Shown here: positions 16,948 to 32,200 of the stretch, one piece after another | Layout of the letters: each line of letters begins with the position of its first letter | Numbering within the stretch: position 1 is the stretch's first letter | Assembly (NCBI GenBank): GCA_907165135.1 | Contig: OU015566.1 | Location: 11,594,001-11,658,000 of the forward strand | Length of the DNA stretch: 64,000 nucleotides | Reading direction: 5' to 3' | Source of the DNA: Oikopleura dioica | Lineage: Eukaryota > Animalia > Chordata | Program-made: the position numbers and the translations under genes | Notes under the pieces: generated by a model | Databases searched by the model: none | Seen by the model: only the letters and a program-made list of their open reading frames with translations | What the model was told of the DNA's origin: nothing

Positions 16948-19900
16948 ATGCCAGATTGGGAAGCGAACTGCAGCTTTTGCCGCCAGAGAGGAAAGACTGT
17001 CGTTTTTGAAAATGAGATTTGGATTGTTCCAAAAACTGTTTGTAAAGTACAACTGCCTCGTGAGCCTGAAAAGCCTTCGGTTCAATTTATCTACGACGAT
17101 AGACGGATTTTAGGGAATAAGTACTCGTTTTTTATTTTTCTTCCTTTTGAAATCTATCTAGCGGGTTCGAAACATTCAAGCAGAAAGTAACATTTGTCTC
17201 CTTATCATCAATATTTTGGATTTGCATTATGTTTGCAACGTCTTATATTGTTTTCGAAGGGAAAAAATTTGTCCCAGGATTCGGTTCAGCCTGCGTTCTT
17301 GAGTATAAAAAGTGCATTTTGTTGAGACAGTTTTCAACCTGCCTTCGCCCTCTTAGAAATTGTGGAAATATTTATCACGAAGGCAGTGGTTGTGAGTTTT
17401 AATTGACCATTGATTTAATGCAGCCTATCAACCAGTTTCAGATTACAAGAAATTCATAATGCCTTCGGAAATTTCTACTATCTCAATAGAAGATCAAATG
17501 CCCAGGAAAAGAGAATATTACGATGAATCCGAGAATGAAGAAAATCGAAAGGAGTGTCTTTTTATGATAAAGAGTGGTGGTCGAATGTGCAAGGAACTTT
17601 GCTCTTTGCAGGATATTACGGACTTTCACCCGTTCGAATTTCTACCGACAGTGCATCGAGTAAGCGAGCAATGCTTTCATATTTGTGAGCTTATCGGAGT
17701 ACCGACGGAGAAAATCTGTCCTTTGAATTCTGGTTGTCGTGATGGATGTCCGTGTCCAGGTGAAAGCCAGAGTAAAAATTAGTTCTTCATAAATTTTTAG
17801 AGTACAAATGCACAAAAACCCTTCCAAAGAAGCAAATAACGATTATTGATTCTCGCACTTATTCATGTGATCATTACAATGATAAATTGAATGATTACAA
17901 TCCTTGTAATGACTATCCGGCTCTTAATTATTTTTCTTTCCTGACATTCAATCAAAATCTCACTCGCTTAGAGATTTCTAGCACGAATGTTCCGATTCCC
18001 TCCTTGATGAAGGAAGTACGATGTTCGACTTTTTTTCAAGGAAAACACTACATATTTATGTCAACCGGAAATGTTTTTCAATATCACAACTATGTTATCG
18101 TTAATGGGATAAAACTAATCTAACAAAATATATTAAGAGAGAAGCGGTCGAGATCTTTTTTCAATCCGATCCCGACCATCTTCCGATAAAGTTTTATCGC
18201 TAAATGAAAACTTTGAGACTCTAATTATTGATGAGCATACACTAGAAAGTCATAGAACAGGTTAAAGCTAGGCCCTTGAATCTAGGGAGGGTGCTCTTGT
18301 GGCACTTTCGTTATATTTGCCCCTGCAGCACTGTCTTTCCTGTGGCACTTGCGCCCAGAGTTGTAAAATACTTTACCTTAGCCTCAAAGTAAAGTAAAGT
18401 ATGTTAAAGTAGAAGCTATTTTTCAGTTTCACTTTACTTTACTTTACTTTAAGATTTTGAAAGTGATCTCTACTTTGCCAATACTTTACTATGGAAGATG
18501 AAAGTGCTTTCTACTTTACTTTACTTTACTTTATGGTTTTCAAAATGAACTCTACTTTACTTTACTCCACTTTAGATTTTCAATAATGATTCTACTTTAC
18601 TTTGCTTTATGTTGGAGTTTTCTCTAGAAAAATCTATTGATATTTATGAAATCTTATTTTACGCTTGAAAAGCGATTATTTCTCTAGACTTGCTATTTTC
18701 GCAAGCATTCTTCAATACATTTTCATAACACTATGCCGCCTAAGCGCAAAAGAGATTCCTTGGAGATTTTTCAAGCCCCCACTGATGAAAAAACGAAGAA
18801 AAGACTTAAAACAATCTTGGAGCACGAAGATATTGCCCCATATAATCTCAAGTCGTTAGAACTCGGACACATTGAAGGAAAGCCGACTGGCCTCGCGCTT
18901 TGCGAATGCGGACAAACCTTTGTCGCTGGTTCAAATGGAGCTCTACATCTCGACAAAAGTATTTATTTCCTGGATAATTTTTAGTCATATTTTGATTCTT
19001 AGTAAGAATACATTTGAGTCGTAACCACGCATCTCGATCATCGCCATGGGATAAAAAATTGAAACAAATCCCTGAAGACCTTGTCAATGGTGTTCATCGA
19101 CAAAACGCTGTTTGCATCGCAACACACAATCTCCCGATGAATATATTTTCTGAGTAAGGTTAAAATAATTGTGTTGAAAATTAACATAAATAAGGCAAGC
19201 ATTTGTGGAGTGCGATCGAATTCTGTTGAAAGGATTGTCACATGACCCTGAAGGGGCTCAAGATCTCAAAATGAGCAGATATCTACTCCGAAAAAGAATT
19301 CGAGATAATGCAATATTGATGAAAGAGCAACTTGGTGGAAATTTCGTTCTTCTTGCGAACGAAGGATTTATTTCTTTGTTATACGATCACAAGACTGTCG
19401 GAAACAAGACCTCCGATTACCAGGATAATATTCTGTCCTTGGTATGTCTTATTCATCTTGGAAATCGATCCAAGCCGTATACGCTTTTCTTCGAGCCTGT
19501 TGATTCTCTAACGAAGCTGGACACTGTACAAACGATTCGAGACGCCCTCATGAAAGACTACGGTATCAACCTTGATGAAATAACAACTCCGTTGCCGATC
19601 ACAGTGGACGGTGGCGAATATCACAGCGCTAAAATGCTGTCTGTCGCATTCAATGTTTGCCTCGCACATTCAATGAATGTTGCTTCAAAGGTTTGAAATC
19701 GAGAACATAGGGTTTCTTTTTTAAGCACAAGTGCGCTAATGGGTTAAAATGCCAATTTTTCGGCACAAGTGCGCTCATAGGTTAATATGTCAATTTTTTG
19801 GCACGAGTGCGCTCATAGGTTAATATGCCAATTTTTTGGCGCAAGTGCGCTCATGGGTTAAGATGCCAATTTTTTGTCACAAAATGCGCTAATGGGTTAG

Positions 19901-22900
19901 CACGCCACTTTTTTGGCACAAGCGCGCTCATGGGTTAACATGCCAATTTTTTGGCACAGATGCGCTAATGGGTTAATCCACAATTTAAAATAATTTAAAA
20001 ATCTTTACAGATTAAGGAATATTTTTAGGGCGCTGTAATTTATGCACAACGCTATTTCGACCTGGAAAATGAGGAAAAACGAATTGACAATTTTCTTTTG
20101 AAAGCACGAAAGGGTCTGAGCAAGGAAGAACTCAAAATCATGAAGAAAGAAGGCATGCCACAAAGCCTCGCGGATTTTTTCTACGATCTTCCAGTAACAG
20201 AAAAAGATTCCGTGAAAATCTTCAAGATGAGGAATCCGGAGTCAAAACTAGAAGGCGATGCGCTCAAATCGATGGCGGGAAAAAAGATCACCCAGTATCC
20301 AATGCCGGCGAATCTTAACAAAATAAGATTCAACAGAATGGATCAGCATCTGGACTTACTTCTCTGCTGGGAAGGTAGAAAGACCGTTATTTTTTTTCCT
20401 TCAAAAAGTTGTAGATAACATGCTGATGATGGACTCCGCCAGCTCCAAATACAGATATCTTATAACTTCACTTGCCGATGATTATCCAAATATGGCCTAT
20501 GTTCGCGCGCATAAATTGGTCACAACGATATTCAGGAAGCATATTCTCCGTGCAGAGAAGAACTCTACTAGGGTGCCAGATGTTTCTCAAATTTTCGAAG
20601 ATTGTTTTCGAGACATTTTGAGTCTCAATTTGACTGCGCATAACTATGATCTAGAGACTGCTGATAATATAAACAGTCTTTGCAAAGGTAAATTTTCAGT
20701 AAAAGAAATATTATTTTTCATTATTTCCAGGCGCAACTTTAAAAATGATGATGATGGTCTTTGGCTCGGCGCGTGTGCCTTTTGAAGGCTCATTTACTTT
20801 GAAGAAAGGAGACGAACCACCTAGAATGACTTTGGTCAACAAGGCGTCAATGTTTATTGACTTCAATCGCCAAAAATGCAATTTTTGGCGACTAAGAGAG
20901 GCTTACAGAAATTCAAAAGGAAGGATTAATATAAATTTTTAAAGAAGATTTTATCTTTATCAAAATAATTTTTTAAAGATCCATTTAAAGACCCGTTTTA
21001 TTTGGCTCAGGAGCTCGTCATTTGCAGTGTCACTACCGATTGGCCAAATGAAGCTCGAGATTTCGTTGTTCAACTATCTCAAAAGCTTGAAACGGAACCA
21101 GAAGAACTAATCATGGACGAATTGGTGATCGAGGAGCAAAACTCGGACATTGATCCAGATGTTCTGAGACAGTCACGAGGATCTCAGCCAAGAATCAATT
21201 CACCATCAGTTGAAGGTAATTTACTTCTATCGAAAAATTATTCAAAAAAAATAACAAGGCGAAATCGAGCGATTCAAGATTTCCGGGGAGAATATGTGGA
21301 GGGCTGCAATAAAGGCAGTTGAAAAAATGGGTGCACAAGTTACTGCCAGCTCATGCTTACGGTCTTTCTACAAATTGTACCGGAAAGACTTTCCAAGATT
21401 AGCAAAGATTGCTGATTATGTAAGTTGACGCATGTATTCAAATTTATACTTTTACTTAAACTTTTAAGTTATGCGCAATGAATGGTTCTGCAAGTGAGAT
21501 TGAGAGAAGTTTCGCTAGTACTACGGCGCAGGTCCAAGATCCAAAGAAAAACAGAACGAAAGCGGCGAAAATTGAGGAAACACTTCAGTTCAAGCAGTCC
21601 AAAGAGTTCTTGGACATGATGAATGAGGCGCTCAAAATGGTCAAAAAGGGCTTATAAGGCTATTTTTTTATAATCAGATTCTATTTTAATAAAACTTTAA
21701 TTTATTTTCTTTACTTTGAAACGTTACTTTACGACTGGCGAAGTGGGGTCCGTTTCACTTTACTTTGCTTTACTTTAGAAAACGAAAAGTGAAGTCTACT
21801 TTGCTTCACTTTACTTTAAGATTGTGACGGTGGGTTTTAATTCACTTTACTTTACTTTAAGATCAATGTTTTCACTTTTACTTCACTTTACTTTACTTTA
21901 AAATGGCCGAGGCAATTTTCACTTTACTTTACTTTAGAAAATTTTAAAGTAGATTTTTTGACACTACTTTACTTTATGGCAAAGTAAAGTATTTTCCAAC
22001 TCTGCTTGCGCCTGTTGTGGTATACCACAGAAAAAACAGTGCCACAAGAAAGACAGTGTCACAGGAGCACCCTCCACGTAACATCTTACTCTTTTCTGGA
22101 ATAACTTACTTCAGTTTATCGACAAACATTTGGAATCAGTTTCGGGGAAATATGTGGACATGGAGTTTTTACAACGGAAATAGATCAAGACTTTGCAATA
22201 GACAAGCATGGAGTTTTTATTTGTCATACTAATGGATTCGAAAAATGCAGGGTTATTTTTCCACACTCCCCAAAAACTCTCTACTCATGGTTTTCAGATA
22301 ATACACTTATATTTTTAGAAAATCAATTGTTCCTCGATTATTAATTGATTTCTCAAAGCCTACAAAAAGCCAGCCGCTGAGGTTCCATCGTTCAGAAAAG
22401 GCATAGACGGCTCGGAAGTGAGCACTTATACTTTCCAAGGACGTTTTGTAAGTAACTTTGGTCAATGTATAGGAAACTCGATGAAAAATGAGCTTTTTTG
22501 GGCTTAGTAGGGAGGGAGTATAATAGAGTTTTTGAAAGCCCAGAAGCTGGGGATCATTTTGACTATTGATAGTCAGGGGTTTAACATATGCCCTGGGGCA
22601 CTTTTGGCCTTCCGAAGGGCCAAATATCTGGTACTCTCAGGATAGGGGACCGTAACTTCTAGTATCCCGGGTCTGTGGTAATAAAACCCATACTGGGTTG
22701 TAGAGTAGGCTCTGACGATTCAGAATATGTGTCAAAAACCATCGTTAGGCCCACTCTGGAGGGCGCTAGAGGCTCTAGAACTTAAGGAAGATGGCCGAAA
22801 ATCCGCACTCTTGGTCCCAAAAAGTGCGAAACTGTTATTTCCTTCGAATGAAAAACGTTTAAGGACATTTTTTATCGATAAAAATATGTAAGAAAAGTAT

Positions 22901-24236
22901 TTCTGGGTCATATGAGATATTCCGGGGCGAGTTCCTACGAAAATCTCTTTTTTTGTAAAATATGACCCCAAATGACCTTCAATGACCCCAAAATACTTTT
23001 TCATATATAAATATCGGTTTAAAACGTCCTTAAACGTTTTTCATTCGAAGGAAATAACAGTTTCGCACTTTTTGGGACCAAGAGTGCGGATTTTCGGCCA
23101 TCTTCCTTAAGTTCTAGAGCCTCTAGCGCCCTCCAGAGTGGGCCTAACGATGGTTTTTGACATTATTATTCTGAATCGTCAGAGCCTACTCTACAACCCA
23201 GTATGGGTTTTATTACCACAGACCCGGGATACTAGAAGTTACGGTCCCCTATCCTGAGAGTACCAGATATTTGGCCCTTCGGAAGGCCAAAAGTGCCCCA
23301 GGGCATATGTTAAACCCCTGACTATCAATAGTCAAAATGATCCCCAGCTTCTGGGCTTTCAAAACTCTATTATACTCCCTCCCTACTAAGCCCAAAAAAA
23401 AGCTCATTTTTAATCGAGTTTCCCTATCAATGTAACTACTACTGTATTCTAACTATGTAACTAAGCATTATGCTTTGGGATTTTCACGGAAAGGCGTAAT
23501 TTTTTATGCTTGTTCGTTTTCAGACGATTCTCTCACAACAAATGGGTACTGGAGTAAGTGGCCTTTACTCAAGTGAGTTCGAACCAAACATAAAGAATCG
23601 AAGATCTGGGTCACTTATTCGTGGAAATTGGAAAGATAATTACTATCAAATTTCATATTCGAAACGATCGGAAATAAATAGTTTTTGCCTAACAACTTAT
23701 ATTTTGTTGGCATTGTTCCTGACTCATATGGAGTCACGATCATTATGAACGACAGGGACCCGCAAAGAACAATAGCTGTGATGGACAAATATGCCACAAA
23801 TTTTTATGTTTCAAGACTAGGTAGATATATCGAATAGATATCGAATTGTAACGTCTTTATATTTAACTATAAGTGGATAACATATTGGTTGATCTTGCCG
23901 TTTTCAAATCAACTCATCGTTTTGGATGGGCCAGTTTCAGTTCCTTTATTCATATCGGCAGGTAAACATAAAAACCTATACAAAAATTGGTAAGAATATA
24001 AATCATGGCTTAGACGATTCTTTATTGTCCAACAACAATATTTCTGCCGCGACTGTCAAGGAAGAATGGCAGACTGCATGTTCCACAACTGTAGACCTTA
24101 CAACCCAAGCGATTTTGTTCAAAAAATGTTAGAAATATCATGGATAGAAGGTACATTTACCAAAAGAGAATTCCGCGATGTTGGTGATCTTTCACTGAAT
24201 GAAATTCGATTTTTGTGGCCAAAAATTTTGGGCTAA
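16948..24236 (+). CDS. Uncharacterised single-pass membrane protein with Cys-rich (CPLNSGCRDGCPCPEYKC) and possibly beta-propeller-like C-terminal region
   Basis: Phase-consistent exons 16948-17120, 17162-17311 (hydrophobic helix), 17357-17391, 17442-17759, 17801-~18090 with 41-50 nt GT-AG introns. Further exons at ~18135-18260, ~22115-22250 and ~23520-23961 are less certain; last exon 24014-24236 followed by AATAAA. The link between the 5' and 3' parts is inferred. Confidence 0.6.
18385..18610. repeat. Left subterminal AAAGT/ACTTT pentamer array of the hAT
   Basis: Many aaagtaaagt and actttactttact copies; mirrored by a right array at ~21710-21990. Confidence 0.85.
18733..21657 (+). CDS. 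hAT transposase, 9 exons, 755 aa, no stops or frameshifts after splicing
   Basis: Exons 18733-18958, 19003-19153, 19195-19690, 20029-20374, 20415-20687, 20731-20919, 20979-21215, 21259-21419, 21469-21657. BED-like CEC..H..H; LLYDHKT (D), ITVDGG (D), CLAH (CxxH), KIRFN, FPRLAKIA..SASEIERSFAS (E, hATC domain). Confidence 0.9.
19717..19976. repeat. ~38-bp minisatellite, ~7 copies, in transposase intron 3
   Basis: Unit approx. TTTTTTGGCACAAGTGCGCTCATGGGTTAANATGCCAA, tandem with no spacers. Confidence 0.9.
22470..23426. mobile_element. Non-autonomous hAT-type foldback element, 957 bp
   Basis: TAGG(G) termini, ~400 bp near-perfect inverted arms, 8-bp TSD TCAATGTA (22462-22469, 23427-23434). Confidence 0.93.
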
Positions 24237-29253: not shown

Positions 29254-32200
29254 ATGGGCAAAAAGGTATGGCGACGTTTAAGGGTGTCGTAACAAGTTAA
29301 AAATAATCGAGCTTTTCAAAAAATTGCCTATCTTCCCTTTTATAGGAATTCCTTCTTAGGGATCGTTGAATTCAAAGACGCAATTTTTGAAAAGCTCAGA
29401 TTTGCCGGTCGGATTTTTGTTTTTCCAGAAGAGTAAGAGACCTTGAAACGAGCTAGTCGAATCATGCTCAAAAATAGTAAAGCTCTTTTAACTTTTCTCT
29501 CGCAGTTGAGAAATCAGAGACAATATGAGTTGGAATAATGATAATTACGATGAGTACGTAAGCGGCCATGTGGCTGATACTGGCAGCTCTATGCCAAGAA
29601 AATCAGTAGTCGAGTCTCTTATGGGCTCGTATGATTTTAACCAGTCGCGGGAGGAGGTAAATGCCGTTACAGTAGGGGACGTAGAGACCATAAAAACCCA
29701 GCATGCGAAAGCAAAATATAATCCGATCGGCAAATTCCTTTGATGTTATGTTTATTTTAACATGATCAAAGTGGTGTTAAAAACATTAACTTCCTACAGA
29801 AAGGCGCTATTATAAGACCATGCATGGTCCAATAATGACCCGTTTCTGTTAATAAAGATTGAAATTTGAATTGCTTGGACTTACAGATCTACTTACAGGA
29901 CTTTTCACTTGCTTCCTCTACGAAGGAATCTAGCTCCAAAAAATCCAAAATGGTAAACACACAAAAATAAACCACTCACAAAATAAAACGAAATAACATT
30001 TGCTTCTAAAAATCCAAAAACTTGGAGCATCACCAAATTAATTTTAAAATTATCAAAAAATAAACGCGCTCATAATTTCACCGCACACTGATTCCATACT
30101 CGCACTTTTGCTTATCCCGCTTCACCTTCGCAGATCCAATTGGCAGGCACGTGATGCCATGAAATGCCATAATTGCTTGTTTAAAAAATGAGCTCAAAAA
30201 TTGGATCGAACTCCGAACTCTTCCATAACCTGATCTTTTTGAAGAGTAAAGCCTTAAATCCGCTTCCCTCGAAAAAAAAATCTCAACCACACCTCGACCA
30301 CGTGATCAGGCCACTTTGCATGATTTATTGAGCCCAGGACGGGGCGGATTATCCAAAATTGATCCGATCTTCGTCTGGCTTTTGCTTCACGTTTTTTTTT
30401 CTTCTTTTCTGAAACACTTTGGAATTCTTTAATTTAGCTCCAGATATGCGTGACCACTATGGATGCCGAGCTGGAGTTTGCCATCCAGTCCAGCACAACA
30501 GGTTAATCAAAATAATTCTTCAACGGGTTAAAATCCCAAAAACATCTCTTACTATTCAAGAAAGTTATTCGCGACCTTTAAAAAATCTCTAGGAAAACAA
30601 CTATTCGACCAAGTAGTAAAAACCATCGGCCTGAGAGAGATCTGGTTCTTCGGCCTACAGTACGTCGACTCCAAGGTACAAAAATTATCACTACGTGGCA
30701 GCGAGTTAACCAACAGTGATCAATTGATTTCCTCCGCGGGTGTCAGGTCATCCTGGTGAACTCGACCATTTTTTTCTTCTCTTTCTCTTGTCGGGTCATA
30801 AATTCCCACTTCAGGGCTTTATCACGTGGTTGAAGCTGAACAAAAAGGTGAACGCGCAAGATGTGAAAAAGGAGACGGGGGACAATGCCATTTACAAGTT
30901 CAAGTTCAAGGCCAAGTTCTATCCGGAAGATGTCTCCACGGAGCTCATTGAAGAGATCACTCAGAAATTGTTCTTCCTTCAAGGTGAAACCCGTTTTTCC
31001 TTACAATTATCACACCCTATTATAGTCAAAGAAGCGATTCTTACAGACGATGTGTACTGTCCTCCCGAAACTTCAGTCCTACTTGCTAGTTATCAAGTCC
31101 AGGCCAAGTTCGGTCCCTTCATCAAAGATGTCCATAACGCTGATTACCTCGACAACGAAAGATTACTTCCCGAACGGTAACTCATTAATATTCCAAAAGA
31201 AAGCCTAACTTCGCCTCTAGTGTTATCAAACAACATCGAATGAGCAAAGAAGACTGGCAGGAGCGCATTTCCCAGTGGCACCAAGAACACGGCTCGATGC
31301 CGCGGGAAGAGGCAATCATGGAGTACCTCAAAATCGCTCAGGACTTGGAAATGTACGGCGTCTCGTACTTTGAAATCACGAACAAGAAGAAGACCTCGTT
31401 ATACCTCGGCGTCGATGCTCTAGGTAAACATGGGATCCGCGTGTACTGAATACCGGAATGTTATTCTAGGGCTGAACATTTACGAAAAGAAGGATCAACT
31501 CACGCCCAAAATCGGCTTCCCATGGAGCGAGATTAGGAACATCTCCTTTTCGGACAGAAAGTTTGTGATCAAGCCAATCGACAAGAAAGCGCCCGACTTT
31601 ACTTTCTGGGTTGAGAGGCTGAGGATAAACAAGAGAATTCTAGCTCTCTGTATGGTAAGTCCGAAAATGTTTAATTTATCTAAACAAGTCAATTTTCTAG
31701 GGCAACCACGAGTTGTACATGAGAAGACGCCAGCCCGACCCAATCGAGGTCCAGCAAATGCGAGCTAAAGCAGAGGAAGACCGACAAAAACGAGAGCTCG
31801 AGAGGTAAAAACCGTAAATTAATTCAAACGCGCTAACCCCTTTACTTTAAAAACTTATGCATAATTTCAATGAGACCATGTTTTTAATCAGTTATTAGAC
31901 AGCGATTTGAGAGCGAGAGAAACCGAGCTCGAGAAGAAGAAGCTGCCAGACTCCAACTCGAGAAAGAAAAAGAGGTTTGAACAAATATATTTTACAGAAG
32001 AAATTTAAATATCTTTAGGCCCTGAAAGCCCAGCTTCTTGCGACAGAAGAAGAGCGAAACCGATTCCGAGAGGAAACTCAAGCTTACCAGTCTCAGTTGG
32101 ATCAGAAAATGAACCAGCTTGCGCAGATGCAGGAGGAGGTGAGGAAGAAGATTATGGTTAATTTGGGATAACACTTTGTAGATTTCACGAATCGAACGCG

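What the first reader, a model, noticed from the sequence alone, without database searches (positions are those of the whole stretch)
18356..22004. Apparently intact Tol2-like hAT transposon with an 8-intron transposase
Seen: perfect 8-bp TSD, near-identical TIRs, AAAGT subterminal arrays and a 755-aa spliced ORF with D-D-E, CxxH, BED-like and hATC motifs intact. Known: medaka Tol2 ends begin CAGAGGTGTAAAGTAC, have AAGTA subterminal repeats and a 4-exon transposase (from memory). Inference: a recent, possibly active element that gained host-style mini-introns, one of them GA-AG (20920-20978). This would tie its expression to the host spliceosome, and it could be a native transgenesis tool.
Basis: partly seen in the sequence, partly recalled or inferred. 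Interest (0 to 1): 0.75.

Follow-up and report, generated by a model that had tools for sequence, protein, structure and literature searches.

The report
Intact nine-exon hAT transposon in Oikopleura
This is a real, structurally complete cut-and-paste (hAT) transposon of the tunicate Oikopleura dioica whose transposase gene is split by eight tiny host-style introns. It is a new member of a known kind, and nothing here shows that it still jumps.

Summary
Window 18356-22004 is a 3649-bp hAT transposon with a perfect 8-bp target duplication (CTTGCGCC), 24-nt inverted ends (22/24) and ACTTT/AAAGT arrays at both ends. Six uninterrupted copies of the repeat it landed in carry CTTGCGCC once, which proves the insertion.

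The genome is Oikopleura dioica OKI2018_I69. The public gene model (chr1.g3172, 688 aa) uses the same junctions but skips exon 6. Exon 6 looks real: it is the least diverged segment between the two genomic copies, and it fills the gap that the public model shows against relatives. Including it requires the GA-AG intron, a class common in this host.

The two copies differ by about 7%, with dN/dS 0.14. A family profile matches Hermes transposase (E 1e-14), and so does the predicted fold.

"Tol2-like" is supported only by the ends (17/21 bases match published Tol2 ends). No Tol2 protein was available to compare. "Recent/active" is not shown: there are only two copies, no short derivatives, and the other copy carries two frameshifts.

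The scan had noted other hAT families in this genome, but not this one.

The parts
18348..18355 (.). Left target-site duplication, CTTGCGCC
   Evidence: It is present once in six uninterrupted copies of the host repeat.
18356..18379 (+). Left terminal inverted repeat, beginning CAGAGTTGTAAAATACTTTAC
   Evidence: pair I5, 92% complementary. A genome-wide pattern search finds only four ends, i.e. two copies.
18386..18609 (.). Left subterminal AAAGT/ACTTT arrays, in clusters about 41 bp apart; probable binding sites for the transposase zinc finger
   Evidence: They match the right-end arrays in direct orientation. The binding role is inferred from Hermes and Tgf2 (PMC10368747, PMC4890040).
18733..18958 (+). 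Exon 1: start codon, PKRKR nuclear-localisation-like motif, and the Cys pair of the BED-type zinc finger
   Evidence: It is an exact substring of the public model P0113, residues 1-75.
19003..19153 (+). Exon 2: the His pair of the zinc finger (H-x4-H)
19195..19690 (+). Exon 3: first half of the RNase H-like core, with both catalytic Asp residues and the CxxH motif
   Evidence: Genomic paralogs match at E 2e-15 to 6e-4. A profile of this region finds 102 library relatives.
19691..20028 (+). Intron 3 (GT-AG, 338 nt), which holds a 38-bp tandem array of 6.8 units at 19718-19976
   Evidence: The array occurs only in the two copies of this element, and the number of units differs between them.
20029..20374 (+). 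Exon 4: holds the R-F version of the hAT RW motif (KIRFNRM)
20415..20687 (+). Exon 5
   Evidence: All four differences from the other copy are synonymous.
20731..20919 (+). Exon 6: 63 codons that the public gene model leaves out, but which are conserved
   Evidence: It differs at 2 of 189 bases between the copies, against 6 of 59 in intron 6. BLASTP to P0002 residues 483-532 gives E 3e-7. It matches paralogs L018-L020 by tblastn. hhalign places it in the gap of P0113, profile columns 523-575, E 5e-4.
20920..20978 (+). Intron 6: non-canonical GA-AG, donor AAG|GAAGGA, 59 nt
   Evidence: The donor is identical in the second copy even though the intron differs at six positions. No GT or GC lies between 20853 and 20995 in a usable phase. 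The host consensus of upstream AG and downstream A is met (PMC7072748).
20979..21215 (+). Exon 7. The public model starts it 12 nt later, at 20991.
21259..21419 (+). Exon 8: first half of the hAT C-terminal dimerisation region
   Evidence: PF05699, 18 bits, P0113 residues 608-663.
21469..21657 (+). Exon 9: the SEIERSF motif with the catalytic Glu, then the stop codon
   Evidence: (aligned to Hermes SSAASERTFS).
21688..21693 (+). AATAAA polyadenylation-type signal, 31 nt after the stop codon
   Evidence: Its function is inferred.
21757..21991 (.). Right subterminal ACTTT arrays
21981..22004 (-). Right terminal inverted repeat. Position 9 is G here; it is T in the other three ends in the genome.
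22005..22012 (.). Right target-site duplication, CTTGCGCC

Best explanation
Window 18356-22004 is a full-length, structurally intact, low-copy hAT-superfamily DNA transposon of Oikopleura dioica (Okinawa assembly OKI2018_I69).

Shown:
- It inserted by the hAT route into a copy of another dispersed repeat and duplicated 8 bp of target.
- Its single gene is open in nine exons, which together code for a 755-residue protein.
- Family-profile and fold comparisons of the public model place the protein in the hAT transposase family. It has an N-terminal basic motif, a BED-type zinc finger, an RNase H-like D-D-E core with CxxH and an inserted helical domain, and a hAT C-terminal region.
- The coding sequence has been under purifying selection.

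Inferred:
- Making the full protein needs the host spliceosome to remove eight introns. Seven are 40-59 nt long, the host's typical size. One is a GA-AG intron of the class that this host splices routinely.
- The public 688-aa model, which skips exon 6, is probably an annotation shortfall or a minor isoform.
- The transposase would bind the ACTTT/AAAGT arrays and the CAGAG ends, cut the element out through hairpins on the flanking DNA, and reinsert it with an 8-bp stagger, as Hermes and Tol2 do.

Unknown: whether this copy is active today.
For: Insertion:
- The target duplication and inverted ends are as described.
- Six uninterrupted paralogous sites carry the 8-mer once.
- A second copy at C1:15864311-15868013 has its own perfect duplication, GCTTCGAC.

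Host:
- The genome has 64,281,565 bases in 19 contigs, matching the 64.3 Mb in 19 scaffolds of PMC8008620.
- The top protein hits are O. dioica OKI2018_I69 gene models on contigs of identical length.

Gene model:
- The phase and junction check passes.
- The public model P0113 contains the translated codons of exons 1-5, 8 and 9 letter for letter.
- Exons 2-9 match five paralogous loci in the same order.
- Between the two copies dN/dS is 0.14, from 46 synonymous and 25 non-synonymous differences (Fisher p 1e-15). The short introns differ by 6.7%.
- Exon 6 is supported.

Family:
- A profile of 11 relatives hits Hermes transposase at E 1e-14 in two stretches, the catalytic core and the C-terminal region.
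- An AlphaFold2 model of the public protein (pLDDT 76.5) matches Hermes at Foldseek E 8e-11. The next fold scores E 0.02.
- PF05699 scores above its cut-off in relatives P0002, P0015, P0044 and P0069.
- ESM Atlas neighbours are hAT clusters.

GA-AG introns:
- They are frequent in O. dioica, with an upstream AG and a downstream A (PMC7072748).
- 11% of introns in this assembly are non-canonical, and the median intron is 49 bp (PMC8008620).
Against: - No RNA data were available, so no junction is confirmed by transcripts. The only public model skips exon 6.
- Pfam finds nothing in single exons. On the public model PF05699 scores 18 bits, below its 21.4-bit cut-off. zf-BED is not detected, and the Cys pair is an unusual CxC.
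- The RW motif reads RF.
- The genome holds only two copies and no short derivatives.
- The copies are about 7% apart, so there is no sign of recent amplification.
- The right end has a mismatch at position 9.
Confidence: 0.8

Rival explanations
1. The element is a complete-looking but dead relic. The family is close to extinction in this genome, and the open frame of this copy survives by chance or because the insertion is not very old.
For: There are only two copies and four ends in 64 Mb, and no non-autonomous derivatives. The copies differ by 7%. The sister copy has two 1-nt deletions, in exons 4 and 7. This copy has a derived G at position 9 of its right end. The RW motif reads RF.
Against: A dN/dS of 0.14 means both lineages stayed under selection for a working transposase after they split. 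All nine exons are open and all catalytic residues are present. Both deletions in the sister copy lie in homopolymer runs of a Nanopore-based assembly (PMC8008620), so they could be sequencing errors. RF also occurs in several relatives.
Confidence: 0.35
2. The true product is the annotated 688-aa protein. A canonical 303-nt GT-AG intron (20688-20990) removes exon 6, and the GA-AG intron is never used.
For: The public model OKI2018_I69.chr1.g3172 (P0113) is built this way and is in frame. The model of the sister copy also lacks exon 6.
Against: Exon 6 is the least diverged part of the element (1.1%), whereas true introns differ by 6-10%. It is open in the required phase. It is homologous to the matching segment of relatives, exactly where P0113 shows a gap. 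Gene predictors favour GT-AG when they have no transcript hints (my own knowledge).
Confidence: 0.15
3. Both splice forms are made. Inclusion or skipping of exon 6 at the weak GA donor would regulate transposition: full-length active enzyme against a shorter inhibitor. The P element's third intron and the short Tol2 isoform work this way.
For: Both forms keep the reading frame. Tol2 makes an inhibitory short isoform (PMC8151067, PMC4818426).
Against: There is no expression evidence at all. GA-AG introns are spliced constitutively in many host genes (PMC7072748).
Confidence: 0.1
4. It is a domesticated hAT-derived host gene, not a transposon.
For: Purifying selection. Very low copy number.
Against: Both copies keep inverted ends, subterminal arrays and their own target duplications at unrelated sites. 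Empty paralogous sites show a plain insertion.
Confidence: 0.03

Closest known systems
Tol2 (medaka, Oryzias latipes) and its relative Tgf2 (goldfish)
   Same: Both make an 8-bp target duplication. The ends begin alike: published Tol2 reads CAGAGGTGTAAAGTACTTGAG and this element CAGAGTTGTAAAATACTTTAC, 17 of 21 identical (PMC1635535). TACTT/AAGTA-type motifs recur near the ends of both. The transposase gene is spliced. The zinc-finger spacing C...C-x19-H-x4-H matches that reported for Tgf2 (PMC4890040).
   Different: This gene has nine exons and eight introns; Tol2 has four exons and three introns (PMC8151067). The element is 3.65 kb against about 4.7 kb. The RW motif that Tol2 keeps reads RF here, and the Cys pair is CxC. 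No protein-level link to Tol2 could be tested. None of the 102 library relatives whose names I looked up was a named vertebrate protein.
Hermes transposase (housefly; PDB 2BW3, 4D1Q, 8EDG)
   Same: It is the only solved structure that matches, by sequence profile (E 1e-14) and by fold (E 8e-11). The two Asp residues, CxxH and the Glu in the S..ER.FS motif all align.
   Different: Identity is about 13%. As far as I know the Hermes gene has no introns. The ends and subterminal repeats differ.
Other hAT families in the same O. dioica genome
   Same: One example is the family with CAGGGATGTAAATC ends at C3:2122868-2126662 (L017 1369-5163, duplication GATGGGAG). Others are the families of P0002, P0015 and P0005. 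Their proteins match in the same order at 22-35% identity. The TGTAAA end motif is shared, and so is the position of the last intron.
   Different: The ends differ, and so does the number of introns. The P0002 family has two introns and a single exon across what are exons 1-5 here. P0002 and P0015 keep RW.
Maize Ac and the Drosophila P element, as transposons whose transposase needs splicing
   Same: The transposase is made only after several introns are removed. In the P element, splicing of one intron decides activity.
   Different: Eight introns is more than the four of Ac or the three of the P element (my own knowledge). One intron here is non-canonical GA-AG. No regulated splicing has been shown.

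Membership tests
hAT superfamily (element level) | 8-bp target-site duplication | tested here: met
   CTTGCGCC flanks this copy and GCTTCGAC flanks the second copy. The 8-mer occurs once in six empty paralogous sites.
hAT superfamily (element level) | Short terminal inverted repeats beginning YARNG | tested here: met
   The ends begin CAGAG and are 22/24 complementary.
hAT superfamily (element level) | Short subterminal repeats at both ends | tested here: met
   20 of the window's 21 ACTTTACTTT sites lie within about 250 bp of the ends, against 0.35 expected.
hAT superfamily (transposase) | RNase H-like D-D-E core with the CxxH motif | tested here: met
   The family profile aligns to the Hermes core at the DxW, D, CxxH and ER.FS positions. 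D190, D264 and H284 are invariant in 11 relatives. The fold matches Hermes at E 8e-11.
hAT superfamily (transposase) | hAT C-terminal dimerisation region (Pfam PF05699) | tested here: inconclusive
   The public model of this copy scores 18 bits, below the 21.4-bit cut-off, and single exons score nothing. However, the family profile matches the Hermes C-terminus at 36 bits, and four relatives pass the Pfam cut-off.
hAT superfamily (transposase) | N-terminal BED-type zinc finger | tested here: inconclusive
   C57-x-C59...H79-x4-H84 sit in conserved columns. Pfam zf-BED is not detected, and the Cys pair is CxC, not Cx2C.
hAT superfamily (transposase) | RW motif at the start of the insertion domain | tested here: not met
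   This element has KIRFNRM. The Arg is invariant, but the Trp is Phe here and in six relatives. P0002 and P0015 keep RW. The change is conservative and not disqualifying, but it is a real difference.
hAT superfamily (transposase) | Cut-and-paste activity | not testable with these tools
   This needs an excision/integration assay.
Tol2 group of hAT | Transposase groups with Tol2/Tgf2 in a phylogeny | not testable with these tools
   No Tol2 or Tgf2 protein sequence was obtainable by reference. No named vertebrate protein turned up among the relatives whose names I looked up.
Tol2 group of hAT | Tol2-type terminal sequence | tested here: met
   17 of the first 21 bases are identical to the published Tol2 left end (PMC1635535, PMC3078864, compared). 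This is a resemblance of short AT-rich ends and does not prove kinship.
Tol2 group of hAT | Four-exon transposase gene | tested here: not met
   The gene has nine exons. Tol2 has four (PMC8151067).

The most novel reading that the evidence does not exclude
This copy is an autonomous, still-active hAT transposon of O. dioica, and its weak GA-AG intron acts as a splicing switch. Including exon 6 gives the active 755-aa transposase; skipping it gives a 688-aa inhibitor. That would be a P-element-like control evolved in a chordate that lacks classical end-joining repair. The element would also be usable as a native transgenesis vector.
Probability: 0.08. Interest if true: 0.65.

Novelty: new member of a known kind. 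Interest (0 to 1): 0.35.

Why it matters
- It adds a well-delimited, apparently complete hAT family to a genome whose DNA transposons are poorly described. 44% of the repeats in this assembly are unclassified (PMC8008620).
- It corrects a public gene model: exon 6 is missing from chr1.g3172.
- It shows a mobile element carrying the host's peculiar GA-AG intron class inside its own gene.
- If the element is active, it would be a candidate vector for O. dioica. I found no paper in the library describing transposon-based transgenesis in this animal.
- It would also raise the question of how hAT excision breaks are repaired in an animal reported to lack classical end joining (PMC12426944).
- None of this changes what is known about how hAT elements work.

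Tried and rejected
- Pfam, exon by exon: no hAT family, only sub-threshold noise.
- Pfam on long ORFs of the paralogs: nothing.
- Word search with exon 3: nothing. With the public sister protein, and then with the family alignment, the search returned only the two Oikopleura models, because the candidate list was saturated.
- PDB sequence search with exon 3 alone: only a spurious multi-repeat match to a TAL effector. I rejected it as chance similarity of DGG...C.AH to the TAL repeat.
I therefore could not fetch the DNA of the unnamed environmental relatives to check their ends, their introns or their source.
- Search for short non-autonomous derivatives, with the end pattern and with each 350-bp end: none found.
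- The bacterial promoter scan is irrelevant to a eukaryote, so I ignored it.
- A canonical alternative to the GA donor: no GT or GC in a usable phase lies between 20853 and the in-frame stop at 20940. A GG donor 3 nt downstream (20923) would also keep the frame, but it fits the host consensus less well.
Exons were searched singly by reference, and the public models P0113 and P0001 stood in for the whole protein.
- Urasaki et al. 2006 (PMC1602067), on the Tol2 subterminal repeats, is not held in the library.
Full report
**What is there**

The sequence at 18356-22004 starts with CAGAGTTGTAAAATACTTTAC and ends with the reverse complement of nearly the same string. The 24-nt arms are 22/24 complementary (pair I5). 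CTTGCGCC lies immediately outside both ends.

Both subterminal regions hold clusters of the pentamer ACTTT/AAAGT, spaced about 41 bp apart. The decamer ACTTTACTTT occurs 21 times in the window against 0.35 expected, and 20 of those sites lie within about 250 bp of the element's ends. Apart from the terminal 24-40 nt, the arrays at the two ends match each other in direct orientation, not inverted.

**Proof of insertion**

The element sits inside a copy of another dispersed repeat, about 125 bp long (window 18287-18355 plus 22005-22067). Searching the genome with each flank found at least six other copies of that repeat in which the left-flank and right-flank matches overlap by exactly 8 bp. An alignment shows them running straight through ...GGCACTTGCGCCTGTTG... 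with the 8-mer present once. These are paralogous empty sites. They show that 3649 bp were inserted and that 8 bp of target were duplicated.

**Host genome**

The assembly has 64,281,565 bases in 19 contigs. This matches the Oikopleura dioica OKI2018_I69 assembly, 64.3 Mb in 19 scaffolds (PMC8008620).

As an independent check, the best protein relatives are NCBI gene models named Oidioi.mRNA.OKI2018_I69..., on contigs of 17,092,476 and 14,533,022 bases, the lengths of contigs C1 and C4 here. Earlier notes of this scan said the same.

That assembly has a median intron of 49 bp, and 11% of its introns are non-canonical.

**Gene model**

I checked it with phase arithmetic and junction codons only, without assembling a joined sequence. 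The model has nine exons:

| Exon | Window coordinates |
|---|---|
| 1 | 18733-18958 |
| 2 | 19003-19153 |
| 3 | 19195-19690 |
| 4 | 20029-20374 |
| 5 | 20415-20687 |
| 6 | 20731-20919 |
| 7 | 20979-21215 |
| 8 | 21259-21419 |
| 9 | 21469-21657 |

- Together they are 2268 nt, that is 755 codons and a stop.
- No exon has an internal stop, and all split codons are sense codons.
- The introns are 44, 41, 338, 40, 43, 59, 43 and 49 nt long.
- Seven introns are GT-AG. Intron 6 is AAG|GAAGGA...AAAG|, i.e. GA-AG.
- An AATAAA lies 31 nt after the stop codon.

Single exons were searched by reference, and the public models stood in for the whole protein.

**Comparison with the public annotation**

The word search with the sister copy's protein returned P0113 (OKI2018_I69.chr1.g3172.t1, 688 aa), which lies on this contig. 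P0113 contains the translated codons of exons 1-5, 8 and 9 letter for letter, with the same junctions. From the end of exon 5, however, it jumps to 20991. It thereby skips exon 6 and the first four codons of exon 7 through a canonical 303-nt intron. Six of the eight introns are therefore independently annotated. The dispute concerns exon 6 and the GA-AG intron.

**Why exon 6 is probably real**

1. Between the two genomic copies exon 6 differs at 2 of 189 positions (1.1%), the lowest value of any segment. Intron 6 differs at 6 of 59 positions, and the short introns together at 6.7%.
2. Exon 6 is homologous to the matching part of relatives.
   - BLASTP to P0002 residues 483-532 gives E 3e-7, between the matches of exon 5 and exon 9.
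   - tblastn finds it in paralogs L018, L019 and L020, in the right order.
   - hhalign places it at profile columns 523-575 of the family alignment, exactly where P0113 has a gap (E 5e-4).
3. No GT or GC donor in a usable phase exists before the in-frame stop at 20940-20942.
4. The donor hexamer GAAGGA is identical in both copies.
5. The donor fits the O. dioica GA-AG consensus, with an upstream AG and a downstream A. GA-AG outnumbers GC-AG in this species (PMC7072748).

No transcript data were available, so splicing itself remains inferred.

**Selection and copy number**

The genome holds one other copy, at C1:15864311-15868013. It is 93% identical and has its own perfect duplication, GCTTCGAC.

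Counting exon by exon gives 46 synonymous and 25 non-synonymous differences. That is dS 0.10, dN 0.014 and dN/dS 0.14 (Fisher p 1e-15). The nine reading frames are therefore real coding sequence. The two lineages also diverged while a working protein was being selected.

The C1 copy has single-base deletions in exons 4 and 7. Both lie in homopolymer runs of a Nanopore-based assembly, so they may be real or may be errors.

A pattern search for the end sequence, allowing up to two mismatches, finds only the four ends of these two copies. Neither 350-bp end finds any short derivative. Nothing therefore points to recent amplification. In this copy the right end has G at position 9, where the other three ends have T.

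**Family assignment**

Pfam finds nothing in single exons. The word search and the PDB sequence search with exon 3 were also blank or spurious.

Exon 3 does find paralogs in the genome at E 2e-15 to 6e-4. Several of these have PF05699 (hAT dimerisation) matches on the parts homologous to exons 8 and 9.

Because the family scans and the word search left the protein open, I ran the exhaustive search with a seven-sequence profile of the exon-3 region. It gave 102 relatives at E up to 0.001. Full-length relatives carry PF05699 above its cut-off.

A profile of 11 full-length relatives matches Hermes transposase at E 1e-14 in two stretches, the catalytic core and the C-terminal region. The two Asp residues, CxxH and the Glu of S..ER.FS all align. 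An AlphaFold2 model of P0113 (mean pLDDT 76.5) matches only Hermes strongly (Foldseek E 8e-11 to 5e-9). The next fold, the P element transposase, scores E 0.02. ESM Atlas neighbours, by features and by structure, are hAT clusters.

Three deviations stand out:
- The RW motif reads RF.
- The zinc-finger Cys pair is CxC.
- PF05699 scores 18 bits on P0113, below its 21.4-bit cut-off.

**Is it Tol2-like?**

The published Tol2 ends are CAGAGGTGTAAAGTACTTGAG... and CAGAGGTGTAAAAAGTACTC... (PMC1635535 and PMC3078864). The left end here shares 17 of its first 21 bases with the first of these. TACTT/AAGTA motifs recur near the ends of both elements. A sister family in this genome ends in CAGGGATGTAAATC, so CAGrGnTGTAAA is a shared end motif.

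At protein level I could not test the claim, because no Tol2 sequence was obtainable by reference. Every relative with a source name is from O. dioica. The rest come from unnamed ENA, Logan or JGI contigs of 1-5 kb. Tol2 has four exons and keeps the RW motif (PMC8151067). This gene has nine exons and reads RF.

The label therefore holds for the ends only.

**Intron history**

The P0002 family (locus L019) has two introns and a single exon covering what are exons 1-5 here. Its last intron sits at the same position as intron 8 of this element.

The environmental relatives are proteins of 700-770 aa on contigs of about 3 kb.

Intron gain in this lineage is thus plausible but not proven.

**Mechanism**

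Shown:
- Insertion with an 8-bp duplication.
- hAT ends and subterminal arrays.
- An open, selected gene that encodes a protein homologous to hAT transposases, with all catalytic residues present.

Inferred from Hermes, Tol2 and Tgf2 (PMC10368747, PMC4890040, PMC8151067):
- The zinc finger binds the ACTTT arrays.
- The D-D-E site cuts the element out and leaves hairpins on the flanking DNA.
- Reinsertion happens at an 8-bp stagger.
- Expression needs the removal of eight introns by the host spliceosome.

O. dioica is reported to lack classical end joining (PMC12426944). Repair of the donor site would then have to go through microhomology-mediated joining. This is an inference worth testing.

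**Verdict**

This is a new, well-preserved member of the hAT superfamily with an unusually intron-rich gene, and the work yields a likely correction to a public gene model. It is not a new kind of system, and its activity is unproven.

The scan had already noted other hAT families in this genome, but none of its notes mention this family.

Noticed in passing
window 22469-23427: A stretch of about 960 bp that is 92.6% identical to its own reverse complement, i.e. a large near-perfect palindrome or foldback, lying 465 bp downstream of the element.
   Followed up: no
window 18287-18355 plus 22005-22067; paralogs e.g. C5:12366021-12366145: The repeat that received the insertion is a module of about 125 bp with at least seven copies in the genome. 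In the paralogs two such modules lie inverted about 500 bp apart, like the ends of a roughly 650-bp element. Only a single module is present in this window.
   Followed up: partly
L017 1369-5163 (G000:C3:2122868-2126662, minus-strand gene); L016 1434-4916: A sister hAT family about 32% identical in exon 3. The L017 copy has perfect 14-nt ends CAGGGATGTAAATC and a perfect 8-bp duplication GATGGGAG. The L016 copy has the same ends but no matching duplication.
   Followed up: partly
window 19718-19976 (intron 3): A 38-bp tandem array of 6.8 units that occurs nowhere else in the genome except in the sister copy, where the number of units is higher. Its role, if any, is unknown.
   Followed up: partly
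window 18423-18566 and 21749-21897: The subterminal arrays of the left and right ends match each other in direct orientation (71-79% identity). Only the outermost 24-40 nt are inverted, so the two ends are built asymmetrically.
   Followed up: partly
window 31596-31605: The only ACTTTACTTT decamer in the window that lies outside the element.
   Followed up: no
window 17459-17782: A 107-codon Cys-rich open frame upstream of the element, in an otherwise gene-poor stretch (about 15.5-26 kb). I did not identify it.
   Followed up: no
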